DNA from: Hyphochytrium catenoides
Lineage: Eukaryota; Protista; Hyphochytriomycota
DNA length: 63,988 nucleotides
NCBI GenBank assembly: GCA_900088475.1
Contig: FLMG01003780.1
Span: 16,685 to 80,672, forward strand
Direction of reading: 5' to 3'
Shown here: positions 44,576-63,100 of the stretch, one piece after another
Position numbering within the stretch: the first letter of the stretch is position 1
Layout: every line of letters begins with the position of its first letter
Notes under the pieces: generated by a model
The model's input: the letters and a program-made list of their open reading frames with translations, nothing else
What the model was told of the DNA's origin: nothing
The model's database searches: none
Translations under genes and position numbers: made by a program

Positions 44576-45744
44576 GGCCGTTTACTTGGCTCTAGCCACA
44601 CAAATTGACTACTGTTTCTTACATACCGCCATCTTCGTTCGGCTACAAGTGCCTGACAGACGCCGATGGCCAAAGGACAAAAGCTTTTACAAGTACTATA
44701 TTATGATAGGACGGTGTCACCTTCAAGCCCTTCCATCCCGCCTATCACCATAGACTAGCATCGGGCTCATGACAAATGCCGAAGATTATTGCCCCGCCAG
44801 ATGCGGGCAGATTATTGAGATGTCAAGCTCTGAATGAGAGATTTCTGTCGAGATGCTTTTTATGAGAGGAGCACCATATATGACTGATAAATATAAATGT
44901 ATGCCAAAATTCACATATCCAGGCCCAGACTATCAGGGATTCGCCCCCAACTTGAACCTCAATGATGTTACAATGTAGGAAGCTCATCTCTGTCAACAAT
45001 CTGACGACTGAGTGGCCGAGGTACCAAGGTATCGCAAATTCAGTAATAATTAGCTCAATTTGGTTATTATGACGGTAAGGACGAGTGTTTTATTCGGAAT
45101 AGAGTCTCTATTGATGAGTAGACAGTGGAGTTGCAGTCAACAATCTGCGCGGCATCAGCATGTGTGATGAGTGTTGGTTCTCACTCTGGACGGACCGCAC
45201 CAGAACCGGCTGATTGTCAGTCAAGAAGTATTATGTTCTTCAGGGCTGGATCGTTAGTGGCTGCGTCTGATGGAGGTAGGTACTTCTCTTAGGGCTATCT
45301 TACCCACTGTCTCCTGATGAGTAGAGCTCTGTCTCTGCTTCCTGGACAACGCTCATGAGAAGCAGATTGCAAGCCATGCTTTCCAACTGCCCTCCAAAGC
45401 TGAGACAAGTCTCTCTTCCCATTCCCTGCCTTCCTCACTTGTGCTGACACTTCCTTCTCATCAAGGCAGTTACCGATTGACCTTCTGAACCGCATCACGT
45501 AGAGCTGATATGAGGCCATATCAGCGGCAAAATAGGGGTCAACTCTTCCAGCCGTAGCTTTCAGCAGTCTCTTGTTATCCGTACATTCGGGCGGGACTCT
45601 AAGGTGACCTTGCTCTAGTCCCCGTATCTTCTCATCACCCACGCAACACACCTTATTGTGCCTTCTTGGGGCAAGACTCTCTTTAGCGGAGTTGTACAGA
45701 ACCGGCGGGCCTTGCAGATTGTCATGGGCACCAGGGAGCTTAGG

Positions 45745-46947
45745 ATGGCCACTTTAAAAAGAGCTTTAAGCTGGGCCTGTTTGGCTTTGATTGCTTCATT
45801 CCAACTGCTTTCGATGCGCTGCCCATATGTGAGTGCTGATGGAGACCATAGCTCCCACTCCTCCGGGCCCACTCCATCCTCAAGCGCCATCTCACTTAGC
45901 TCTTCGGTTTGTGTTACAACCCCATCAGATGCAGCATGCAAGACCTACACTTACCCCGATGCCGATGCAAGAGCGGATTTAGACAAGCTGTGCACTTCTA
46001 TGCCCTTCATGATTGGATGTAGCCTTCGGTCCCTGTGTGACGCTAAGTCAATTGTCTCTGAGAAGTACTGCGCACCCATCAGTCTGTTACAGACAATTTG
46101 CATTGAAGACACTGGCATGAGCAGCATGCAAGGCTGTGCCAATGTCTCCTCTCTTTGTGGCTCTGGGGGTTCTGTCGTGGAGCAATGCAAGCAGAAGCCA
46201 CCGATTCCCTCAGTTATTGAATCATTTTCGACCACAAAGTTGGCCGTCAAGTCTTGCTCTCAGATGAACATGGACGGCTGCGACCTCTGTGTCTCTGAGA
46301 ACAACTGCAAGGACCCCTTGATGGCCATGTCAAGACTTTGTCAGTCCATGTGGATGGATGAATGCCAGGAATGGAAAAGCATGTGCGACGCCCTGCCTGA
46401 CAACGAAAGGCAGTCTTTAGCAGTCATCTGCGGCTCCTCTTCACCTAGCGAAGCCACACCTCTTATGCGGATGTACTTCCACACAGGCCTTGTGGACTAC
46501 GTTCTCTTCAAAGGGTGGGTACCACGGACACCCGGTTACTATACCCTCACCGTCCTGGCTATCCTGCTCCTTGGAATACTCTCAACTCTCCTTCGTCTCT
46601 TTAGAAAGAATGCTGAGATGAAGTTTGCGATGAAAGACGCCAAAGATTCCGCCGAGGTCCATTCCCCTGCAGACAGAGGTGAAGCTGGGGTCGTCATAGT
46701 GAATGGCATGAAGCGCAAGGTACTATCACGGAAGACAATCCTCCTGCAAAACGCTGTCAGAGGCGCGTTCATGGCGGCCATAGTGACGGTGGACTACATG
46801 CTCATGCTGATTGCTATGACCTTCAATGTCGGCCTGTTCATAGCTGTCGTGGTGGGCTTCAGTCTAGGCCAGCTCTTATTTGGGCACCTCCTGGTGGAGG
46901 AAAGGGTCGGCTCGCCCGGTGTGGCAGACCCAATGTGCTGCGGCTAG
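45745..46947 (+). CDS. Ctr (SLC31/COPT) copper transporter with signal peptide and Cys/Met-rich ectodomain
   Basis: Intronless. MRMYFHTG precedes TM1, the MxxxM motif lies in YMLMLIAMTFNVGLFIAVVVG, there is a GxxxG, and the C-terminus is MCCG. Hydrophobic N-terminal leader from ATG 45745. Confidence 0.92.
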   Translation: MATLKRALSWACLALIASFQLLSMRCPYVSADGDHSSHSSGPTPSSSAISLSSSVCVTTPSDAACKTYTYPDADARADLDKLCTSMPFMIGCSLRSLCDAKSIVSEKYCAPISLLQTICIEDTGMSSMQGCANVSSLCGSGGSVVEQCKQKPPIPSVIESFSTTKLAVKSCSQMNMDGCDLCVSENNCKDPLMAMSRLCQSMWMDECQEWKSMCDALPDNERQSLAVICGSSSPSEATPLMRMYFHTGLVDYVLFKGWVPRTPGYYTLTVLAILLLGILSTLLRLFRKNAEMKFAMKDAKDSAEVHSPADRGEAGVVIVNGMKRKVLSRKTILLQNAVRGAFMAAIVTVDYMLMLIAMTFNVGLFIAVVVGFSLGQLLFGHLLVEERVGSPGVADPMCCG

Positions 46948-47804: not shown

Positions 47805-50800
47805 ATGGGAAGAAGAGTACGAGGAAGTGGTGGTGGCAGAGGACCACCTGAAGATCTGCTAGCAGCTCAGCAGGAGGCACTCAGGGAGCTAGAAGAGGCG
47901 CAGAAACTCTTTCAGGAGGCACGGCGCCAGGCAGAAGAGGCGAAAAGAGTACATTCTGAGATACTTGGAGCCGCAGAGGAAGCCATGGCAGTCAAAGAGG
48001 CAGCCCAGATGCAGCTCGCTGGTGCTAAGACGAAGAGATCACCGAAGAAAGGTTAGAGCATCCGCCTTCGCTTCTAGCCCCTTTTTGTTTATTCAGCTAG
48101 ATTGCGGATGAGCCTAGAAACATGACATCTGGCACTTCGCTTTGTCCTCTCGCCCTTGCGCTGGTTCCTTGCTCTGTTTCAAGTAGGAATCTTGTCCTGG
48201 CCACGCTATGTCAGGCGATTTTCTGTTTCTTTGGCAACTCTAAGCTAGACTAAGCTCCTCCTCACCCTGCAGCTCAAGGTAAAGCCCCAGAGTATGGTTC
48301 AGGGTCCTACTGGGAGGAGCGGTATGCCGCCTCTCTTCCCTCCGCTTCTACAAAAGGACTAAGCGATGGTGAAGAGGCGTCCCTCTATGAGTGGTACGGC
48401 GACTTCTCTTCGCTAAGACACATTATCACCTCGGCCATTCCTCTTCCAGAACCATGTGTTGAAGGTGCGCCAGAGGGCAGGTCAGAGAGAGGAAGGGAAG
48501 AAGTTGAGGAGGAGGAAGGGGCGATCCTTCTCGTGATTGGAACGGGGAACTCTTCTCTGTGTGAAGATCTAGCATTGTACGGCTATCCAAGAGTTATTGG
48601 GACAGATATCTCTCCCACCGTCGTGGAGTTGATGAACGAGAGAGCGCTAAGAGGTCAGCCACGAGGGAAAACAGGGTCTCCAGATAGAGAAGACGAAGCA
48701 AAAGCGAAAGGAGAAAGAAGAGAGCGAGAAAAGCTGGCCGATAGATTGACCTACTATCACCTGGACGCACAAGATATGAAGATCATTCCCTCTCTTTCCT
48801 GCAGAGGCGTGATAGATAAGGGTACCTTGGATGCCATCCTGGCTGGTGGCAAAGAAGGAAATGATGAAGAAGGAAAGACGGTGGAACGTGAGTCTCTCTC
48901 TCGGGCGGAAAGGGTTCTAACAGAAGTGAGTCGCGTCCTGAAGGAAGATGGAGTCTTCCTTCTCATCTCTGCGGTTGAGCCAGAGAAGTACAAGCCTCTT
49001 CTCTCCTCATATTTCTCTCTGGCTAACGTGACGCCCTTCCAAACGGACTACGGAGTACCAGCTTTTGCCTATGCGCTCCGCAAGCAGAACAGTGAGGACA
49101 AGCAGGGCGGAGGAGCGATTGGCGCCATTGTGCAAGCAATCCAGCGACTTCGCCTGGAAGTAGACAACGAAAGAGAAGAGGCGATTAGCAGTTGTTGGTC
49201 CTCTTTACAAGGTCTGAAGGAGCTCAAGGACAGACTGACATTTGAGCAGCAAGCTGCCGGAAAGGAAGTTGATGCAAAGTGGAAGGCGTTTCTCTCAGGA
49301 CTCGAGAACGAGGAGAAACAGAGTGAGGAAAAGCAAGAGGAAGAGCCGTACCATAGTGATTGTGAACCATCAGATAGAGAAGAGATTGTCCCTACATGCC
49401 CTCAATGCCTCTCTCTCTCCAAGACAGCTGGAGTCTCTGGAAACTGTTCCTGTGGCCTTCGGATCAGCTGGAGTCAGGATGAGGAGGAAGTAGCGCTTTC
49501 CATTTCTCTTCCCTATCCCTGCCAAGCTAAGGATGTTAAGGTTGATATAAAGAGAGAGAAGGTGACAGTTGTTCTCGCTTCTGCTCCCTCTTCATCGCCG
49601 TCTTCCTCTCCTTTGGTTCTTTTGGACCACCTTCTTCTTCAAAGGGTTAACCCGGCAGAATCTGTGTGGACTCTACTTGATGAGGGCACTAGTCTTCATG
49701 TAGGTTACCTCTTCTCTTTCTCTCCTGTCCCACCTCCCCTGTTGCGATGTTTTTCTCTTTTTAACGCTTATTCCCCTGCCACGTCATTCTCGCTCGTTTT
49801 CTCTCCTCTCTGTTTCTCTCCACATGCCTGGCTATAGTTTCCTTGCCATCTCCGTCCCTTCGTAGCTATATATCGAAAGTGCTCTACCTTGTCCACGGCT
49901 GGAACAAGGGAGACTGCGTTACCTTTGTGTTCTGTCCAAACCTTCACGATCGATTTCTAACACTGACCAACTCCAGCTTGTTTTGGCCAAGACCCCAGAC
50001 GGAGGAAAGAGAGAGAAATGGAGTCGCATCTTCTCTCTCTCCCGTCCTCTCTCCTCTTCCACACACCCGCAGGTGTCGCTGCACCTTTTGGCGAAGGAGC
50101 TTCGTCAGGGTCGGTATCGGTGTGAGGTGGCAGCCGAGGTGCACTATATAGGTGGCAAGGTTCATGACAAGGTCAGAAAGAAGGGAACTAACGTTCTGAG
50201 GACCGGTTTTGCAGTCTAGTTCACTTTGTCTTCAATTTTTAGCTCTTTCTCCTTTATTTCTTCGTTCTCTGGCTAGACTTTGGTCCACTTTCTCTTCCGC
50301 ATTACCTGTCTGGCTCTCTCTCTCATGTCCTCTCTGTTCTTCAGGACTATGTCGCGATCTACCCATTTCACACTGCGGGCATCGCCTCCAATCTCCAAAG
50401 AGTGTCCATTCTATCGGACTTTGAAGATCTGTGCTTCGTGACGGAAGGAGAGCAGGAACAGGGAGGACGAACAAAGCTCTGGTTGATGCTTCCACAATCG
50501 AGTGGAGCCTACGTCCTATACCTTCTAAACGGGAGAAACAGGGTAATGGCGCAGTCTTTCCCTTTTCAGGTCTCTCTCTCTTCTCCTAGTCCATCCGTTT
50601 CCTCACTGGAGCAGTATGAAGAGAAACAGCCTTTGGAGGAGGACGGAGAGCAGACCCTTCCAACAGCGCTTCAGTCATTGTCGCTGAAGCGGGAAGACGA
50701 GCTCTTGCCAGGAAACTCTACTCCTTCCATTGAAGGAAGAATAGGGCAAGGAAAAGCAAGGGAAGAGAAAGATCCTAAGGTCGTTATTGAGAAGCTCAGT

Positions 50801-52883
50801 AATATAAGGTGCTACCAAGTATACTGCATCACGCCAGGAAGAGCGAGAGAGCTCACGGTGCGACAGAGTGCTCGGGACACATTGTCTCTCATTTTTAAAG
50901 GCTTGAACAAGGAAGAGCAGATGTTTCAGACAAGCCAAGAGGACAGAGAAGAGAAGAAGGTCCCACTGAGCTTTGACCTTCCAGTGGACGTGGAAGGGAT
51001 CCTGGCTCAAGCGAACGTAAATGCTCTCTTAATCCTGCTCAACCCATCCTTCGCTAAGAAAGCATGATAGCTGCCCAGCTGTTGCCTCTTTCCTTCACCC
51101 CGACTTCCCTTACAATGCTAGAGCTCCAGCGGGACTCTTGCCCCATTGCGCTCCGATCTTTCCTGCCCTGGTTCTCACGCTTGCCAACGCTTCTCCTCAA
51201 TGTCATGTGTCAGTGTGATGGACTCTCTATCATATAGTACTCTGGCCTGATTCTATCCTTTACTTCTCGAAAGCCCTGGTCTCCTTGTCCCCTCTCCCCA
51301 CGTGTTGTTTCTGCTCCCCTCAGGGTCCCTTCCTTATCCCTTCTCGTCGACAGCGCTCTTGCTCACAATGTTATCCCAGGAGGATTACATCTCTCTTCGT
51401 ATCCCCTTCAAAGAGAGAGAGAACGGAACAGGTGCGGCGTGGCAACGCGCATTGAATGTTTCGCTGACATTCCAAGAGGAACTGGAGCCTAGCAGCTTTG
51501 CCTTGATGGGCTGCAGGTTCTGTGGACAGGAGCTCAGTAACAACAGGATTGAGCAGGTATCGTGTCGTCTGGTTTCTACCTCGCTTGGTCACACCTCTCT
51601 TTCCTTCTCTAACTTTCTCGTTTTATTCTATCCATCAATATCCTTCCATGACTCAGCTTACAGCGTCTTCTGGCCCGATGCCGCCATAATCTAGCAAGGT
51701 AGTTCTCTTTCCTCAACCTCGTTTCTTTACTCGTCTTCTCTCTCCCTCTCTATCGTCTTTGGCCCTTTCTTCTCCTAACCCTTTGGCCCTACGTCGCCTG
51801 TGTCAGGTGTTCCCTCTCCCATCCTCTGGCTGGCAGGACATGACAGAATATTGGACCAGCTGCCTCGAAATCTCTCAAAAGATCCCTAAGGAAGACATCA
51901 GGGCCTCTCCCCGAAGGTACGCCGAAGCCAACATTATAGCACAATGTGCCTCAGGACTGATCTGCCTCCCTTACTCTCCTTCCTGTCTCTCCTTATCTAT
52001 CTTTCCCTCCCTAGATGTTACCTAGGAACCACCTTCCTCCTCCTACATCCTTCCGATCTCCTGACAGGAAGCTTCATTCTAGAAGGAGAGAACACGACCC
52101 CTACGATTGTGCGCTGTTCTCGCTGCTTGTCCCTGCTAGGCATCGAGGAAGGCAGAGGCAGAGAGGGAGACAAGCAAGGGAGGACCTTTAAACTGGAGAA
52201 AAAGGCGCTCTTCTCTAATAGAGCGGAAGATGTAATGGAAAGTGCTAGTAAGGCAGGACAGAGGTTGAACATTCTCTCTCAATACAGTGTGGAGAGCTGC
52301 ACCGCTGTTTCCATGATGGAGTCAGTGGACGCCGCCGCGGGATACTCATTCCTTCTGAAGGTAGTGAAAGAAGAACTGAAAGAGAGAGGGAAGGACGACA
52401 GCAATAACGAGGAACTCAGGGGAGAAGTGGTTGGACGTTTGCAGGTAAATTATAAGGCTAATCCTGTTAGCTCTTGCCCACGCTTTCTCCGCGGAGACTC
52501 CAAATCACAGTCTAAGCATCTGTCCCTTTTCCACCCTCTAGCTGCCTAGCTGCCGCTTCATACATTTATCGCAGGTTTCTGTCTCTCTTTCTAATAGTCA
52601 TCGCTCCCTCTCCTCTTGTTCTGCAGGTGCTAAGTTGGGATCTTAGCCTTCTTTCCGGAGGCAGTGAGCAATGGCAGAGAGTGCTAAAGGTGACCTACAA
52701 TCGCGAGAGAGAAGGCGAAAGAAAGCGAGGGGGTAGCTCAAGGTACAGTCTTACTGTTTGCCATTGTGACTTCTTTGGAGCTGACTTGAGGAGATAGCAG
52801 GCCCACCCACGTTCTTGTACTGACGCAGGAGGAGGCCGAGGAGGTAAGGAGAGTACACTGCTCTCTCAGTGGGCTGTACCTCC

Positions 52884-52942
<59 letters not shown>

Positions 52943-53075
52943 ATGTGGGGCAGAGTGAGCACAGGCTAACGCATCTCTGCAGCTTCTTTCAGGTCTAGAG
53001 GAGACTACCGCGCTTCTCCCTCGATCATGCCAGTCCTTCCTCTCCTCTCGCGTGGGCTATCTCCGTCTTCCCTAA
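47805..53075 (+). CDS. Multidomain fusion: EEF1AKMT4/METTL13-type SAM methyltransferase + CS(p23) + SKICH-like + UBE3D/Ipa1 (HECT_2) (~1,140 aa, 10 exons)
   Basis: In-phase exons 47805-48051, 48273-49699, 50073-50171, 50345-51016, 51380-51556, 51807-51916, 52015-52444, 52627-52742, ~52800-52843, 52983-53075. MTase: EYGSGSYWEERY, YEWY, IGTGNSSL, DKGTLDAIL. CS: WSQDEEEV...VNPAESVWTL. SKICH-like: DYVAIY...SFPFQV. HECT_2: EKLSNIRCY, CRFCGQEL, PLPSSGWQDMTEYW, RCSRC, LEETTALLPRSCQSF. Confidence 0.75.
52888..52936 (+). repeat. (CT)n microsatellite (intronic); representative of many GA/CT tracts, e.g. near 5050, 5315, 10440, 33565, 37950, 58905
   Basis: Uninterrupted CT dinucleotide run. Several N gaps abut such tracts. 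Confidence 0.95.
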
Positions 53076-53121: not shown

Positions 53122-53971
53122 CTATGGCGCTTGGAACTGTAGGACCACCATGCTGCTGCTCTCTCTTTCACTCTCCAGCTCTTCCCTAGTTAAGGCCCTA
53201 AGTCGTAGCCTTTGCCGGATCCTTTGTCTCTGGTCTTCATTGGAACTTCGACTGAGAGGCACTGGAAGAGATAGGAACGAATCGCTTGTGCAGCTCATTC
53301 CGTCTTCCTCTACGCCAAGAGATCGCCTGCAAGTAGATATCTTAGATATTGAGGAGACTAGATGCCACTCCTCCAAAAGCAGGAAGAAAACGAGCGCCCC
53401 GTGGTCGTCAGTTTCTCTCTCCCACAGGGCGTCATCTGCCCGTCTCTGCTGTTGCTCGTCTATTCTGACTTGCAAGTCCTCCATCATTGACTCCCAATGC
53501 GTCCGTATGGCTTCCCTTATCCCTCGCTCAACCTCAGAGATCTCCCTGAATATTGACGGGTCGTCCGTCGTCCACACACTGACAGGCGTATCTTCTTCAT
53601 CAGTGCTTCTCTCTTCCTCCTCTCCTCTGTGCAAGAGAAAGAGAGGAACCCCTTCAAAGAGTTTCTTCTCCAAGAGGTCGAAGAGTGGCGGGTGATAGGG
53701 AAAACGCAGCGAGAACTCCCGGTCCCTCTCTCCAAGAGAGGTAAAGGGATTGCCTCTGATAATAAAGAATTCTTCGCCCGCGTTGTCTCTTCTTGGTCTT
53801 CCATGCTCTGCTCCTTCTCTCTCTTGATCTTGGAAGACAAAGATGAACTTGGAACTGGAAGGGGTGAGGGCGAACCAGTTCTTAACCAGCCACTGTCCCA
53901 CCTACATAGAACGACACGTGTGAGGATGGAGAAGCTTGAACCAAAGGGACAGAAAGAGAGAGAGAATGAGG

Positions 53972-54007
<36 letters not shown>

Positions 54008-55752
54008 TGATGCGACTGAGTGTATACGAAGGGAAAGAGTGTCGAGAGAGGGAATAGAGGAGTATCGGACCTTTGGAAAGAGCGAGACTAACGTGCTTTC
54101 AGGGACATCAGGCGACGAATGAGCTGACTCCAAGTACTCGACGAACATATTCTGGTCGAGGTAAAGAGAGAGAGAGACATTCGTTCCTCCGCCTCCTTCA
54201 TCTCTCACTCTCAACTCTGTCTGCTTGAATGCCTGAAGGAGATGTTGCGCTACACTGAAGTGAGGGTCAGAGAGCGGGGAGAGCGAGGAAGAAGACAGAC
54301 GTAGGATTTGAGACAGAGTAGAGAGGAGACCGTTCACATTGACAGTGCCATCAGGCAAGAGATGGTGAACAGCCACTACTCCTGCCTCTCCCAAAAGGGA
54401 CCTTGGGACTTCTGCTTTGCCCGCGGAAGGTCTACCGCTGGAGAGGAAGGAAGCTTCGATGGCAGTAGAAGAACTCTGTGAAGGAAGAGACCCATTTGCT
54501 TGTTGCTTTAGGGTCTCTCGGAAAAGGCGCACTACCTTCTCCTCCTCCATCTGAGGCCTCATCTCCTCACAGCGAGACAGAAGGAACAGGACCTTGTGGC
54601 CTGCAGGAAGAAGTTCTGCTAGCGTATCTAGCCGTTGACAAATCTCTCTCTCTCTTGAGTTGGCTTCTTGTGTCTCTGCAGACGTCGTCCCCTCTTGTCC
54701 TACTGCACTCTGGCCTTGCACCGGAGCTTGGTGGCCAACCAAAGAGGCGGTGTTGACGAAATAAATGACGGCTTTTGCACGGCTTAGCAGGGCCAGGGAC
54801 TTCTTCATCACTGTCTGGAGTCTTTCTTCCATGCCAAACCAAACATCCTTCTCATCATCGTCACGGTGCGCTTCTTCCGTGGCTCGTACCCTGTCCTTAT
54901 CTCTCTTCTTGACTTTTTCTTTGTATGCGAGACTGACCAGTCTATCAAGGTGGTCACCTCCTAGTTCTATGAACTGCAAGAGGATGTGCCTTGTATCCTG
55001 AGGAATATCCTCTTGGAAGGGCGTGAGGTCCGCTCCTTGTTCCTCTAGGAAGAAGAGGAAATCTTCGAGCGTAAGAAGAAGAGAGCCTTGCGCAATGTCA
55101 GTGTCCAAGAAGGGCAACTCATCCATCGCCGCACCTAAGCCCACACCGTGTGGAAGATAGCGTCCGTTGACAAAGCTGCTTTTTAGTATGGGGAGGACGG
55201 CATTGAGCTCAAAGAAGTGCGCCTCTGCGGCGTCTGAGAAGCTGTGGATAAAGGTAGACTTGCCGGCGTTCTGGTCTCCTAAGAGGATGAAGGTATAGAC
55301 CTTGGTAGGCGAATGAGAGGTGGTGAANNNNNNNNNNNNNNNNNNNNNNNNNNNNNNNNNNNNNNNNNAGAGAGAGAGAGAGAGTGTGTGTCAGAAAGAG
55401 AGAACGACAGGCAGGAGAGACAGACAGACAGAGACAGCGGGAGAGAAACGCAGATCCAGAACAGCCCATATCTAAGCATTGAGAGACCATTAAGAGGGAG
55501 CCTTCCACTTGAAGACTAGGAGAATTGACAGACCAAGACCAGTGACCTTGACGAGAGGACAAACGATCTCTGAACCGTTGAAAGACTGTCTTGATAAACC
55601 GAGACAGACAGAGGGAGGGGAGCTCCAATTAAAAGGAGAGATGCAGCTCAGGCTGACGGAGGGTTCATAGAGAGAGATCTCACCTGGAAGAACCCGAGCT
55701 CTGACCTCTGGATCGGAAGCCGCTTGCTCTTCTTCTTATGTTCCTCTTCCAT
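53122..55752 (-). CDS. Divergent P-loop GTPase-like protein (~690 aa, 3 exons)
   Basis: Exons 55752-55684, 55300-54071, 53901-53122, all phase 0. Walker A FILLGDQNAGKSTF, G3-position LQFIELGGD, then AVIYFVN and G4-position VLFLLSRCE. Confidence 0.72.
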
Positions 55753-58931: not shown

Positions 58932-60130
58932 NNNNNNNNNNNNNNNNNNNNNNNNNNNNNNCCCTCTCTCTCTCTCTCTCTCTCTCCTCCTCTTTATGAT
59001 CTCTCTGGTGCAGAACCTGCTTCTCCTTGGGCTTCCATTGCTGGCGGTTAAGTCATTCTCGCATCTCGTCCCCGTGTTAGTCAGTACGGCCCCTTCTGAT
59101 TCTTGGCTTCCTGTCTCCTCTATGAGAGGCTGTACCACTGATGGGATCTGAGAGAGGAGAGCAGATCGACGAGGAAGGGGCTGGGAGAGAGGCAAACACC
59201 AAGGGAGAGACCAAAGATAGATTGTAGCCTCTCGTGTCTTAGACTAGATGTGAGGAACAACAAGGGAGGGAGAGCAGACTCGAAAGGGCAAGTTAGATAT
59301 AGTAAAACAATAGAGGAAGGAAGGACAAAGGCAAACGCTGCTTCCCCTTTGTCCCTCTCCGTCTACGGTCAAGCCTCTTATTACCTCTCTACTTCTCTCT
59401 CTCTCTCTTTCTTGCTTCGAGTAGGGTCTCCCTCTTCACTGGCTCATCCCTTTCAATCCTTCCGTTACCTTATCTTAACACTCTTCACCAGCCGTACTGC
59501 TTCTGCTTTGCTGACCTGAGCGGCGTCGCCTACTTCTAAAAAGTCTTCTTCGTTTCTCTATCTCCCTCTCCCAAGACACGCCGCTGCACTAGATCACACG
59601 GCCACTACACTCGTCTCATCGAGCCCACACCGTTCCTTGGGCGCCATGTTCCTCATACTTCACCGGTACTATCCTCCTACTATGCTCAGCATCCAGCAGA
59701 AAATAGAGCTGGAGATCAGCTAAGCGTCTCCCATTCTATACGAGCCACCCGCCTTCGCCTGATCTGCTGGCTAAAGACATTTCTTTCTTTGCCAGTTTTG
59801 TCCTTAGACCCTCTGTCCATCACTATCATCTCTTGCTTTGGCTTCTCTCTACTACTTCAATCTCCCTTCCGCTCTCTCTCATCGCTCCGCCATATCCGGA
59901 CTCACTGCTCTCCATGCGATGAACTCATTCTGACCCTATCTTTCTCTCAGTCCCTGTTCCTTTCTCGCTTTCTAAAATCTTCATCCGCTACAACTTGTTC
60001 CGACTGCTACGTCGTTCTCTGTCATCGCCAAAAGGAGCGGCTAAGGAAACTAGGGCGAGGACACTTTTCCTTCTTGGCGGGAACGCTGTCTGACGTTGAG
60101 CGCTGAGCTTCTCTTTGTGATAGGGTCGTG

Positions 60131-63100
60131 ATGCTGAGAGGGATAGAAGATGAGAAGGACTCAGATGCCCTCAGCGTCAGTGAGGCGACCTCGAGGAGTA
60201 CGCGAGCAAGAGAGAGATCCCTAAGAAAAGAAGAACTACCTTCCACCACGTCTTACTCTTCTCCACGCTCCCCTCGCCCTTCTTCGAAAGGCGTCAAGTC
60301 CTCGTCTCCCCCTCCCATGCTCCTAATACCTCCCTCTTCTCTGGCCCTTCGCGTCTCCCCCGCCATCGCTCCACTTGGGCCTCTCTTGTCTTCTCCTCCT
60401 TCCGCGCGACCTTCCGCTCGTGTCAATAAACGGCGGTACACTCTTCCTGGGACGGTCTGGAAAGCGGAGTTCCGTCCCACGTCAAAGGTCCACTGGCGGA
60501 TGTTCTCCTGCTCTCGGGGCGATCGGTCCCGCTGGCTCATTGATGGACTGATAACTGAACTGCTCGAGGGAAAGCTCTCAGTCTCTGTCTTTCCTCTATC
60601 TTCCCAAGACCTCCCGTCCACTTCCTCTGGTGACAGAGCAGAAGATGACCCGGAGGAGCCTAATAAGCGGTTCAAGAAATATATTCTCTCTCGCCATCGC
60701 AGGCTGATTGACGGAGCTCACGTTCTCTTCATCTTCGGCCTTCTACTGTTGAATTTGGGCTTCTTCTTCCCTGCGGACTGGAGCTTCCTCTGTCTCCTTG
60801 GGCTCCTCTTCATGCTTCCTCGGCAGCTGATGGTCATAGTAACGCTTAGACGGTTCATGCTCACCGTACTGCTAATCTATTCCTTCGAGTATGTCTTTCT
60901 CTCCTTTCTTTCTATCATTCTCTCCTCTCTGTGGGTGGCCATGCTCGCTCCTCACCCGGACTGGGCGAGGGTACTGGGCGTTCTTAGCATTCTTCTCAAT
61001 GTCCAAGTAGCGCTAACATACGACGCCTGGGACATTAACTTCCGTGCCCGAGGGAGGCTTCCTCTCTCCCTCATGCTCCTCACCTACCTGCTCTTCGCCA
61101 TGGCTTTCCAGCTTAGAGTCTTCCCTATGATAAGAAGGGACGACGTTCCTCTCCCGCTACTCTGGTTCAAGCTCCTCCCAGCAGACGTCGTGGCCAACAT
61201 CTTCTATTTGTACGGGATCTACCATTGCAAAATGCTCTTCGACATCTGGAGACTGAGGAGAAACGGAAGAAAGAGAACAAAGAGAAGGGTTGCCGTTCCT
61301 GGCGCGCCTTCCCCTCAAAGGCGACTGAAAGAAGGCGCAGATAAGAAAGGAATAGGCACCGAAAAAGAGGAAGAGAGAGAGAGAGAAGGCAAGAAAAGCA
61401 CTATTTCGATCAGCGGAGAGAGGTTAAAGAGTGAGGTCGAGACGATCTCCATCCGCGTGCCTCTCATTCTTAGAGTGAGAGTGCAGAAGCCTAAGAGATT
61501 AGACTTGGGAAAGCTCTTGCTCTCCCGTTCTCCCCAGTCACCCGTCTCCTCTGCACGGACGGCTCTGTTCACTCCGGAGGAGCTTCAAGAACATTCCCTG
61601 CCCTCTCCTCTCTCCACGGCACGCACCCAAACGCCTCCCAGCTTAAGAGAAGAGGGAGAAGAAGGAAAGAGAAGTGAAGAAGCAGTACTGCCTCGGCCCC
61701 TTGAACCAGCCTTCCGCCGTCCGCGTTCTCTTTCTCTCTCTGGCCCCATCGGCGTCCCTAACAATAACAGCAGCCTGTCTCCGTCTCCACCACGCTCAGG
61801 GAGCCTCCTAGTCGCTCCTGTCATCACGAAGCAGCTAACTAAAGAAGGGAGATCTCCATTTTTCGTTACGGAGAAACAGAGTGTTCTCTCGGTACCAGGG
61901 AGATTGCCTGCCTCGCGAATACTTCCTCTCACCGTGGAGAAACCTCTGTCTCCTAACATCTCTCCCCTAGCCGGTGCGCCGTCTGAGGATAAGGTTGGAA
62001 TGTTCTCTTCTTCCTCTCTTGCCCATTCACATCCTCTTCCCTTGGACCGGAATCAAGAGACAGGGCCACAAAGTGCTGTCGCCAGGGAGGAGTCTAGCGA
62101 GGACTCGGGCCTCGGTTATGTTGTCTGCCTTCCTGCCTCTTCCTGCTCAGTGGCTCCTCTCTCTTCTTCCCCCACGTCAAAAGGAGACAGAATCTTTGAG
62201 CCAAGAGAGAGAGTCTTCGCGCCTCCTGCTACCTCTCCTTCTGCGGCGTCATCACTCATTTATCAGAAAATGGTAAGAGATAGGCTACCTGGTAGAGCCG
62301 ATAGCGAGGATAGAGGACAGCTTTCCATCGGTGGTCCTCCGCTTCTGTCTCGCTCTTTCACAGAAGGGACGAGAAGCCACTCTCCTTCTTCCCTCTCGAG
62401 AGACCAAGCTGTGCGATCTTTCCGTATGCCGAAGGTCCGCGCGGTCCCTGTGGAGGCCGCGCCACTCACAGAGAGAAGAAAGAACAGCCCCACTGCTTCT
62501 CCCCGCACCCCTTTCCCTCTCTTTCTCCCAGCGCCAGCTTCACGAGAGTTGCCGTTAGATAAGAAAGAAGGCGTCACTTCCCTTGGTGCTCCATCAGAAA
62601 GGGCTTCACCTTCAAAGAGAGAGGCACCCGTGAGCGGCCCTGCCATTCGTCCTAGTCCCACTGCTGAAGAAGTCCGAGCCTTNNNNNNNNNNNNNNNNNN
62701 NNNNNNNNNNNNNNNNNNNNNNNNNNNNNNNNNNNNNNNNNNNGGCTGGAGACACAGAGTCCGTGACAGAGAGAGGAACAATAATTAGCAGTCCTTGCTC
62801 CTCCGCTCGCTCTTCTGCCACAGAACAGAAGGAGAGCCCACTTGCTATCTCTCCTCCTTCTCCTTCTGCGAGTGGTACTCGACGCCTCTCGTTGAGAGCT
62901 GCCCTCAATCTAACTATGCAGACTGGCACTCTGGCTCCTTCTGGATCTGATCCTCCCCAAGACGCTCCCACTCCCGTCTCTCCCTTGGGCACGCTGAAGA
63001 GGAGACTGTCTTCCAAGATCTTCCCTCAGAACGAAGTCTCTGTTTCATCTGCTCCGCCGCTGTCTCCTCCTCTTGCACTCATCAAAAAGAACGTATTTCT

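What the first reader, a model, noticed from the sequence alone, without database searches (positions are those of the whole stretch)
47805..53075. Methyltransferase-CS-SKICH-UBE3D fusion: candidate coupled methylation/ubiquitin quality-control protein
Seen: ten exons join in phase with canonical splice sites and no internal stop. The chain runs from a coiled-coil N-terminus through a seven-beta-strand MTase, an acidic coil, a CS domain and a SKICH-like beta-sandwich to a complete UBE3D/Ipa1-like region. Established: EEF1AKMT4/METTL13-type enzymes methylate protein lysines, CS domains are Hsp90 co-chaperone-type modules, SKICH occurs in the autophagy receptors NDP52/TAX1BP1, and UBE3D/Ipa1 acts on the CPSF73/Ysh1 endonuclease. 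I know of no protein combining these. Inference: a Rosetta-stone link between lysine methylation, chaperoning and ubiquitin or 3'-processing control. This is the best candidate for an undescribed system in the window.
Basis: partly seen in the sequence, partly recalled or inferred. Interest (0 to 1): 0.85.

Follow-up and report, generated by a model that had tools for sequence, protein, structure and literature searches.

The report
Methyltransferase fused to UBE3D chaperone
This is a real single gene that joins a protein-lysine methyltransferase, two small binding modules and a full UBE3D/Ipa1 module into one 1169-residue protein; the same fusion exists, unnamed, in other protists, which hints at an untested link between lysine methylation and control of the enzyme that cuts mRNA 3' ends.

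Summary
Ten GT-AG exons (47805-53075, + strand) give an open 1169-aa protein. The second intron ends at 49976, not 50072. The extra 32 residues complete the CS domain.

- **Domains confirmed:** an eEF1A-KMT4-type seven-beta-strand methyltransferase with intact motifs, a NudC-type CS domain, and a full UBE3D/HECT_2 region.
- **The "SKICH" module:** it is an Ig/fn3-type beta-sandwich. SKICH is its nearest named relative, but only weakly. There is no Pfam hit.
- **One gene, not two:**
  - Introns split the CS domain and the sandwich.
  - The sandwich and the start of UBE3D share exon 4, with no methionine between them.
  - A family profile built without the window covers residues 23-975 in one stretch (E 1e-94).
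  - Homologues are single uninterrupted ORFs on genomic contigs, or come from a Paraphysomonas transcriptome.
- **Not unique:** I found at least eleven diverged relatives in environmental and transcriptome data. None is named, and I found no paper on them.

No RNA run was listed, so splicing in this organism is not shown directly. The mechanism is inferred: a methyltransferase tethered to the client held by the UBE3D module (CPSF73/Ysh1). I class it as a new variant of known kinds, of moderate interest.

The parts
47805..48051 (+). Exon 1 (aa 1-82, ends in phase 1). Contains a Gly/Arg-rich start, a charged helical stretch (aa ~15-75) and 'KTKRSPKK'.
   Evidence: This is the first in-frame ATG after a stop. 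The donor is AAG|GTTAGA. The helical stretch aligns with the N-termini of the homologues.
48273..49699 (+). Exon 2 (aa 83-558). Contains the methyltransferase, the second charged helical stretch, a Cys-rich stretch and most of the CS domain.
   Evidence: Pfam CS 2.9e-9 (profile positions 2-68 of 78) and Methyltransf_11 6.7e-6. The closest solved structure is 2PXX.
48287..49105 (+). Seven-beta-strand methyltransferase domain (aa ~88-360). Motifs: YWEERY at 48308-48325, motif I VIGTGNS at 48533-48553, Post I GTDIS at 48599-48613, Post II DKGTLD at 48815-48832.
   Evidence: The defining Post II motif [D/E]-K-G-T-X-D is taken from PMC5737405.
49439..50036 (+). NudC-type CS domain (aa ~472-578), split by intron 2 (49700-49976).
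   Evidence: Pfam CS. For the homologue's CS domain, every solved relative listed at E up to 1 (six chains) is a NudC-family chain. Exon 3 supplies the last strands.
49977..50171 (+). Exon 3 (aa 559-623). Contains the end of the CS domain, a short linker and the first strands of the beta-sandwich.
Evidence: The frame is open from 49977 to 50171. The acceptor is CTCCAG|CTT.
50070..50593 (+). SKICH-like Ig/fn3-type beta-sandwich (aa ~590-706), split by intron 3 (50172-50344).
   Evidence: A profile that includes the window's pieces hits only NDP52 and TAX1BP1 SKICH chains at E 0.0013-0.058. The model of the homologous P0001 region has SKICH domains as its top 14 Foldseek matches. Language-model features point the same way. 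There is no Pfam SKICH hit.
50345..51016 (+). Exon 4 (aa 624-847). Contains the rest of the beta-sandwich, an acidic linker and the first part of the UBE3D module, in one open frame with no Met in the linker.
50771..53072 (+). UBE3D/Ipa1 (HECT_2) module (aa ~766-1169) across exons 4-10. CxxC pairs: CRFC at 51512-51523 and CSRC at 52115-52126.
   Evidence: HECT_2 scores 28.8 bits on exon 7. blastp aligns window aa 737-1169 to P0011 719-1173 at E 2e-26. P0011 itself hits HECT_2 at 1.1e-39.
51380..51556 (+). Exon 5 (aa 848-906).
   Evidence: GT-AG borders, in phase. The junctions fit the homologue alignment.
51807..51916 (+). Exon 6 (aa 907-943, partial codon at its end).
52015..52444 (+). Exon 7 (to aa 1086).
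   Evidence: Pfam HECT_2 7.7e-7.
52627..52742 (+). Exon 8.
52801..52843 (+). Exon 9 (43 nt).
   Evidence: This acceptor is needed to keep the frame. The product 'PTHVLVLTQEEAEE' aligns with the homologues.
52983..53075 (+). Exon 10, with the stop codon TAA at 53073-53075.
   Evidence: The C-terminus '...ALLPRSCQSFLSSRVGYLRLP' aligns with the ends of the homologues.

Best explanation
Anatomy (confidence about 0.95). One ten-exon gene encodes a 1169-aa protein. In order it has: a charged helical N-terminus; an eEF1A-KMT4/METTL13-N-type seven-beta-strand protein methyltransferase with intact cofactor and Post II motifs; a second charged helical stretch; a NudC-type CS domain; a SKICH-like beta-sandwich; and a complete UBE3D/Ipa1 (HECT_2) module. 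It is the local member of a conserved, unnamed protist family.

Mechanism (inferred, about 0.3). By analogy with yeast Ipa1 and human UBE3D, the UBE3D module binds and stabilises the mRNA 3'-end endonuclease CPSF73/Ysh1 outside the mature cleavage complex. The two beta-sandwiches add holding or adaptor surfaces. The tethered methyltransferase methylates a lysine, or an N-terminus, on the held client or on a protein bound with it. Under this reading, methylation is coupled to assembly or turnover of the endonuclease.

Shown here: the gene model, the domains, the intact motifs, and the conservation of the fusion. Inferred: the client, the substrate, and any coupling between modules.
For: - **Gene model:** it is open and GT-AG throughout.
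- **Exon/intron pattern in alleles:** indels in an independent DNA run fit the model. There is +7 nt at 49718 and -2 nt at 51793, both in introns, and +3 nt at 50723 in exon 4. Of 32 listed coding differences, 14 are synonymous.
- **Domains:** Pfam CS, Methyltransf_11/31 and HECT_2. The closest solved methyltransferase is 2PXX, which is eEF1A-KMT4. DKGTLD matches the activity-critical Post II motif (PMC5737405). The motif residues are invariant across the nine homologues aligned and are present in the window. The CS domain is NudC-type.
- **One gene:** the CS domain is split by intron 2 and the sandwich by intron 3. The sandwich and the start of UBE3D share exon 4. The family profile covers aa 23-975 as one envelope, E 1.4e-94.
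- **Conserved fusion:** eight scanned long homologues carry HECT_2, seven of them with a detectable methyltransferase hit. P0001, P0011 and P0018 are single uninterrupted ORFs on multi-gene contigs. P0015 comes from the Paraphysomonas transcriptome MMETSP1103.
- **Role of UBE3D/Ipa1:** it binds the Ysh1 C-terminal domain, prevents aggregation and is not part of core CPF (PMC6436931). It maintains Ysh1 and CPSF73 levels (PMC7236606; PMC9385686).
Against: - No RNA run was listed for this organism, so the joined transcript is not seen directly.
- Nothing here shows that the module binds CPSF73 in this lineage, or that the methyltransferase acts on it.
- Characterised members of this methyltransferase subfamily methylate eEF1A or citrate synthase, not 3'-end factors (my reading of the KMT literature; not checked).
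- SKICH kinship is weak. There is no Pfam hit. A confident model of the subfamily-2 domain matches generic Ig/fn3 folds, with NDP52 SKICH only at rank 9, Z 7.7.
Confidence: 0.5

Rival explanations
1. Same gene and protein, but the methyltransferase keeps the ancestral eEF1A substrate. The UBE3D, CS and sandwich modules then serve a proteostasis role at the ribosome or proteasome, not mRNA 3'-end processing.
For: The closest solved relative is eEF1A-KMT4. Its paralogues also act on eEF1A (PMC5737405; titles). A paper cited (Lutz et al. 2018) links Ipa1 to proteasome activity.
Against: The fused methyltransferase is only about 30-37% identical to any free-standing relative and carries lineage-specific insertions, so a changed substrate is plausible. 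The best-supported partner of UBE3D/Ipa1 is CPSF73/Ysh1.
Confidence: 0.2
2. The methyltransferase is a binding scaffold that no longer transfers methyl groups, and the protein is simply an enlarged UBE3D.
For: There are large charged insertions inside the fold (aa ~208-240 and ~275-292). Pfam methyltransferase scores are weak in some homologues, and P0033 shows none at E 0.01.
Against: Motif I (GxGxS), the Post I aspartate and Post II D-K-G-T-L are invariant across the nine diverged homologues aligned and are present in the window. A dead enzyme would not be expected to keep them.
Confidence: 0.08
3. Two neighbouring genes (methyltransferase-CS and sandwich-UBE3D) were wrongly joined by reading exons together, or the assembly is chimeric.
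For: No RNA evidence could be obtained.
Against: Domains are split by the very introns in question. There is no Met between the sandwich and UBE3D in exon 4. Homologues are single ORFs. Contigs from two DNA runs cover the whole stretch, and one bridges exon 2, intron 2 and exon 3 (49532-50012).
Confidence: 0.04

Closest known systems
eEF1A-KMT4 (EEF1AKMT4; PDB 2PXX) and its subfamily (eEF1A-KMT2, METTL12, METTL13 N-domain)
   Same: Both have a seven-beta-strand fold with the N-terminal 'Y..YW..RY' extension, motif I, the Post I aspartate and the Post II motif [D/E]-K-G-T-X-D. 2PXX is the best solved match.
   Different: Here the domain is embedded in a 1169-aa multi-module protein, is flanked by charged helical stretches and carries two charged insertions. 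Its substrate is unknown. In humans, EEF1AKMT4 shares its locus with ECE2 (gene structure section of PMC5737405); there it is never joined to UBE3D.
UBE3D (human) / Ipa1 = Yjr141w (yeast), Pfam HECT_2
   Same: The C-terminal ~400 aa align collinearly with homologues that cover nearly the whole HECT_2 profile. Both CxxC pairs and the C-terminal motif are present.
   Different: From my own knowledge, known UBE3D/Ipa1 proteins are stand-alone and about 390 aa long in humans. Here the module has no start of its own and follows three other domains.
NudC-family CS domains (NudC, NUDCD2, NUDCD3)
   Same: There is a Pfam CS hit. All six solved relatives listed for the homologue's CS domain at E up to 1 are NudC-family chains, with E from 8e-4. 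The 'SW(S/A)QT'-type start is shared.
   Different: The similarity is low. The domain is present in only one of the two subfamilies of the fusion. Hsp90 or client binding is untested.
SKICH domains of NDP52/CALCOCO2 and TAX1BP1
   Same: The size and beta-sandwich fold agree, with a 'D(W/Y)(I/V)G(I/V)(F/W)'-like strand. A family profile hits only these chains (E 0.0013-0.058). They are the top 14 Foldseek matches of the P0001 model, at 16-24% identity.
   Different: There is no Pfam SKICH hit. The P0001 model is of low confidence (pLDDT 60). The confident subfamily-2 model matches many Ig/fn3 folds equally well, and its profile does not find SKICH.

Membership tests
eEF1A-KMT4-like seven-beta-strand lysine methyltransferases | Post II motif [D/E]-K-G-T-X-D, shown to be crucial for activity (PMC5737405) | tested here: met
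   DKGTLD lies at aa 264-269 (48815-48832). D-K-G-T-L is invariant in the nine homologues aligned.
eEF1A-KMT4-like seven-beta-strand lysine methyltransferases | AdoMet-binding motif I and the acidic Post I residue (D88 in KMT4) | tested here: met
   VIGTGNS and GTDIS are present. They align with the GCGNS and S(V/I)D(Y/I)S of 2PXX through the homologue P0001.
eEF1A-KMT4-like seven-beta-strand lysine methyltransferases | Closest solved relative belongs to the family | tested here: met
   2PXX is the only hit for the window (2.2e-13). It is the top hit for P0001 (1.8e-18), far above other methyltransferases.
eEF1A-KMT4-like seven-beta-strand lysine methyltransferases | Methylates a lysine of eEF1A | not testable with these tools
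   Needs an enzyme assay.
CS domain (PF04969), NudC type | Pfam score above the gathering cut-off | tested here: met
   38.2-40.6 bits against a cut-off of 21.3. Profile positions 69-78 are supplied by exon 3.
CS domain (PF04969), NudC type | Binding to Hsp90 or chaperone clients | not testable with these tools
   Needs binding assays.
SKICH (PF17751) | Pfam SKICH profile match | tested here: not met
   No hit on the window's exon pieces at E up to 10, nor in eight homologues at E up to 0.01. The window's domain could only be scanned in two pieces because an intron splits it.
SKICH (PF17751) | SKICH-type beta-sandwich fold and sequence kinship to solved SKICH domains | tested here: inconclusive
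   In favour. Not specific: (NDP52 at rank 9, Z 7.7).
UBE3D/Ipa1 (HECT_2, PF09814) | Pfam HECT_2 score above the gathering cut-off | tested here: met
   Exon 7 alone scores 28.8 bits against a cut-off of 22. The collinear homologues P0011 and P0001 score 136.9 and 95.1 bits.
UBE3D/Ipa1 (HECT_2, PF09814) | Complete module from the N-terminal sandwich to the C-terminal motif, with two CxxC pairs | tested here: met
   Window aa 737-1169 align to P0011 719-1173 (E 2e-26). CRFC and CSRC are present. The first pair is invariant in the family.
UBE3D/Ipa1 (HECT_2, PF09814) | Binds the C-terminal domain of CPSF73/Ysh1 | not testable with these tools
   Known for yeast and human proteins only.

The most novel reading that the evidence does not exclude
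The fusion marks a dedicated methylation step in the life of the mRNA 3'-end endonuclease. A KMT4-family enzyme methylates CPSF73, or a protein held with it, while UBE3D chaperones it. In organisms where the genes are separate, humans included, UBE3D and a KMT4-family methyltransferase would then cooperate in the same way.
Probability: 0.17. Interest if true: 0.8.

Novelty: new variant of a known kind. Interest (0 to 1): 0.55.

Why it matters
UBE3D/Ipa1 is essential in yeast, and mice lacking it show severe embryonic abnormalities, yet its mechanism is poorly understood. It is named as a ligase but behaves as a stabiliser or assembly factor of CPSF73. The eEF1A-KMT4 subfamily has few known substrates.

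A fusion kept across diverged protists is a natural experiment. It places a lysine methyltransferase and two chaperone- or adaptor-type modules on the same polypeptide as UBE3D. This yields a concrete, testable hypothesis: methylation of the UBE3D client. It also names a candidate partner class to look for in model organisms. If the methyltransferase simply keeps eEF1A as its substrate, the result is a modest addition to domain-architecture catalogues.

Tried and rejected
- **RNA evidence:** no RNA run was listed for the whole gene. A second search with kind 'any' listed only DNA runs and three tiny runs that hold nothing of it. Splicing is therefore unconfirmed by reads.
- **Word-indexed protein searches:** these were nearly blind here. 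Candidates were saturated by methyltransferase and low-complexity words. The calls returned the query plus one methyltransferase-only protein, five methyltransferase-only proteins and one without Pfam hits besides P0001, or two new members.
- **Named family cluster:** the ESM Atlas has no cluster of 50 or more members with this architecture.
- **Sequence search against solved structures:** the exon-4 part of the sandwich found nothing, and the UBE3D module found nothing.
- **Fold of the sandwich:** The second was confident but matched only generic folds. The subfamily-2 profile did not find SKICH.
- the window's own spliced sandwich and full-length protein could not go to Pfam or to structure prediction. 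They have no reference, and I did not type long sequences. Homologues were used instead.
- **Organism:** it was not identified here.
Full report
**What is in the sequence**

Between 47805 and 53075 on the + strand, ten exons with GT-AG borders join in frame into a 3510-nt coding sequence of 1169 aa. The start is the first in-frame ATG after a stop. The stop is the TAA at 53073-53075.

The exons are 47805-48051, 48273-49699, 49977-50171, 50345-51016, 51380-51556, 51807-51916, 52015-52444, 52627-52742, 52801-52843 and 52983-53075.

Donor 49699 joins acceptor 49977, not 50073. Both are in frame. The longer exon adds 32 residues ('LVLAKTPDGGKREKWSRIF...') that align with the last strands of the CS domain in homologues. 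It also scores 330.4 against 322.2 bits with a family profile that excludes the window.

An upstream Ctr copper-transporter gene ends at 46947. Open frames on the opposite strand start at 53122. The gene therefore has its own space.

**Domains**

- **Pfam on exon translations:**
  - CS scores 2.9e-9, covering profile positions 2-68 of 78.
  - Methyltransf_11 and Methyltransf_31 hit exon 2.
  - HECT_2 scores 7.7e-7 on exon 7 (28.8 bits, cut-off 22).
- **Methyltransferase.** Its only solved relative by sequence is 2PXX, which is human eEF1A-KMT4 (PMC5737405). That paper defines the subfamily by the Post II motif [D/E]-K-G-T-X-D and shows it is needed for activity. The window has DKGTLD, plus motif I VIGTGNS, Post I GTDIS and the N-terminal YWEERY extension. 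These residues are invariant in the nine diverged homologues aligned.
- **CS domain.** It is of the NudC type. For the homologous domain of P0011, all six solved relatives listed at E up to 1 are NudC-family chains, including NudC, NUDCD2 and NUDCD3.
- **UBE3D module.**
  - The C-terminal ~400 aa align collinearly with P0011 (aa 737-1169 to 719-1173, E 2e-26) and with P0001.
  - P0001 covers HECT_2 profile positions 39-365 of 369, and P0011 matches in two stretches, the best covering 1-221. They score 95.1 and 136.9 bits.
  - Both CxxC pairs and the C-terminal motif are present.

**The "SKICH" module**

Residues ~590-706 are conserved across the family.

Evidence in favour of SKICH kinship:
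- A profile that includes the window's two exon pieces hits only NDP52 and TAX1BP1 SKICH chains in the PDB (E 0.0013-0.058).
- The top 14 Foldseek matches of a model of the P0001 domain are all SKICH domains, at 16-24% identity.
- Language-model features of two family members point to SKICH-labelled clusters, with scores of 0.89-0.91.

Evidence against a firm call:
- There is no Pfam SKICH hit anywhere.
- The P0001 model has a mean pLDDT of only 60.
- The confident model of the subfamily-2 domain (pLDDT 83) matches many Ig/fn3 sandwiches equally well. NDP52 SKICH comes at rank 9 with Z 7.7.
- The subfamily-2 profile does not find SKICH.

I call it a SKICH-like beta-sandwich and not a family member.

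**One gene or two**

No RNA run was listed, so I relied on four other lines of evidence.

1. **Domain continuity.** Intron 2 splits the CS domain and intron 3 splits the sandwich. The sandwich, the linker and the start of the UBE3D module lie in the single open exon 4, with no methionine in between.
2. **Family profile.** A profile built from eleven homologues matches window residues 23-975 as one envelope (E 1.4e-94).
3. **Homologues carry the same fusion without splicing.**
   - P0001 (1110 aa), P0011 (1174 aa) and P0018 (1157 aa) are single uninterrupted ORFs on multi-gene contigs.
   - P0015 (1068 aa) comes from the Paraphysomonas transcriptome MMETSP1103.
4. **Independent DNA runs.**
   - They cover the whole stretch, and one contig bridges exon 2, intron 2 and exon 3.
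   - Allelic indels fit the model: +7 nt and -2 nt in introns, and +3 nt in exon 4.
   - Of 32 listed coding differences, 14 are synonymous.

**The family**

An exhaustive search of 1.84 billion representative proteins with exon 2 returned 179 hits at E up to 0.001. Nine of them are 1038-1310 aa long. Of the eight I scanned, all carry HECT_2, seven with a detectable methyltransferase hit and three (P0001, P0005, P0011) also with CS. A further search added P0164 and P0165.

There are two subfamilies. One has the CS domain and includes the window. The other lacks it, and there the sandwich follows the second helical stretch directly.

All members come from metagenomes, Logan assemblies, EukProt or MMETSP. 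None carries a functional name. The closest is only about 25-32% identical to the window, so this lineage is poorly sampled.

**How it probably works**

The intact methyltransferase, the intact UBE3D module and the conserved order of modules are shown. The rest is inferred.

- Yeast Ipa1 binds the Ysh1 C-terminal domain, prevents its aggregation and is not part of core CPF. It is proposed as an assembly factor (PMC6436931).
- Ipa1 maintains Ysh1 levels (PMC7236606).
- Human UBE3D stabilises CPSF73 (PMC9385686).

The simplest reading is that the UBE3D module holds the endonuclease, or another client. The NudC-type CS domain and the sandwich add holding or adaptor surfaces. The tethered methyltransferase modifies what is held. 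I put this at about 0.3.

The main rival, at about 0.2, is that the methyltransferase still acts on eEF1A and the protein works in translation-linked proteostasis. A scaffold-only methyltransferase (0.08) fits poorly with invariant catalytic motifs. A two-gene artefact (0.04) fits poorly with everything above.

**Comparison, novelty and score**

Each module belongs to a known kind, and the combination is what is new. Full-text searches found no description of it. The Atlas has no sizeable cluster with this architecture.

It is right in the sense that the family is undescribed. I rate it a new variant of known kinds, with interest 0.55. It is a solid, conserved Rosetta-stone lead with a clear experiment attached, but no functional evidence yet.

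Noticed in passing
window 49346-49456: A Cys-rich stretch (C-x11-CPQC-x12-CSC) lies just before the CS domain. It is absent from the aligned homologues and may be a lineage-specific zinc knuckle.
   Followed up: no
window 47808-47846 and 48027-48050: The N-terminus starts with an RGG-like 'GRRVRGSGGGRG'. Exon 1 ends with a basic 'KTKRSPKK' that looks like a nuclear-localisation signal.
   Followed up: no
window 52877-52952: There is a long (CT)n microsatellite followed by (GT)n inside intron 9. Contigs of the DNA runs appear to break there.
   Followed up: partly
window 47805-53075: Contigs of run X1 differ from the window at about 70 places in 5.3 kb and carry three indels, while run X2 is nearly identical to the window. 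This suggests two diverged haplotypes or strains under one species label.
   Followed up: partly
window 45658-46947 (+): A single-exon Ctr-family copper transporter (Pfam Ctr 1.1e-27) has a long Cys-rich N-terminal region.
   Followed up: partly
window 53122-55144 (-) and 60128-62788 (+): Long open frames (259, 420 and 886 aa) have no Pfam hit at E 0.001.
   Followed up: partly
P0006:412-556 and relatives (subfamily 2): The confident model of the sandwich domain shows an unusually long beta-hairpin (strands 101-117 and 122-134) protruding from the sandwich. As a result, Foldseek ranks antibodies with long CDR loops first.
   Followed up: partly
L002 5462-8986 and L003 4821-8345: The P0011 gene sits in the same neighbourhood (a weak MORN-repeat match, Mnd1, then the fusion) on contigs from two marine metagenome sources, in a very gene-dense, apparently intron-poor genome of unknown identity.
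   Followed up: no
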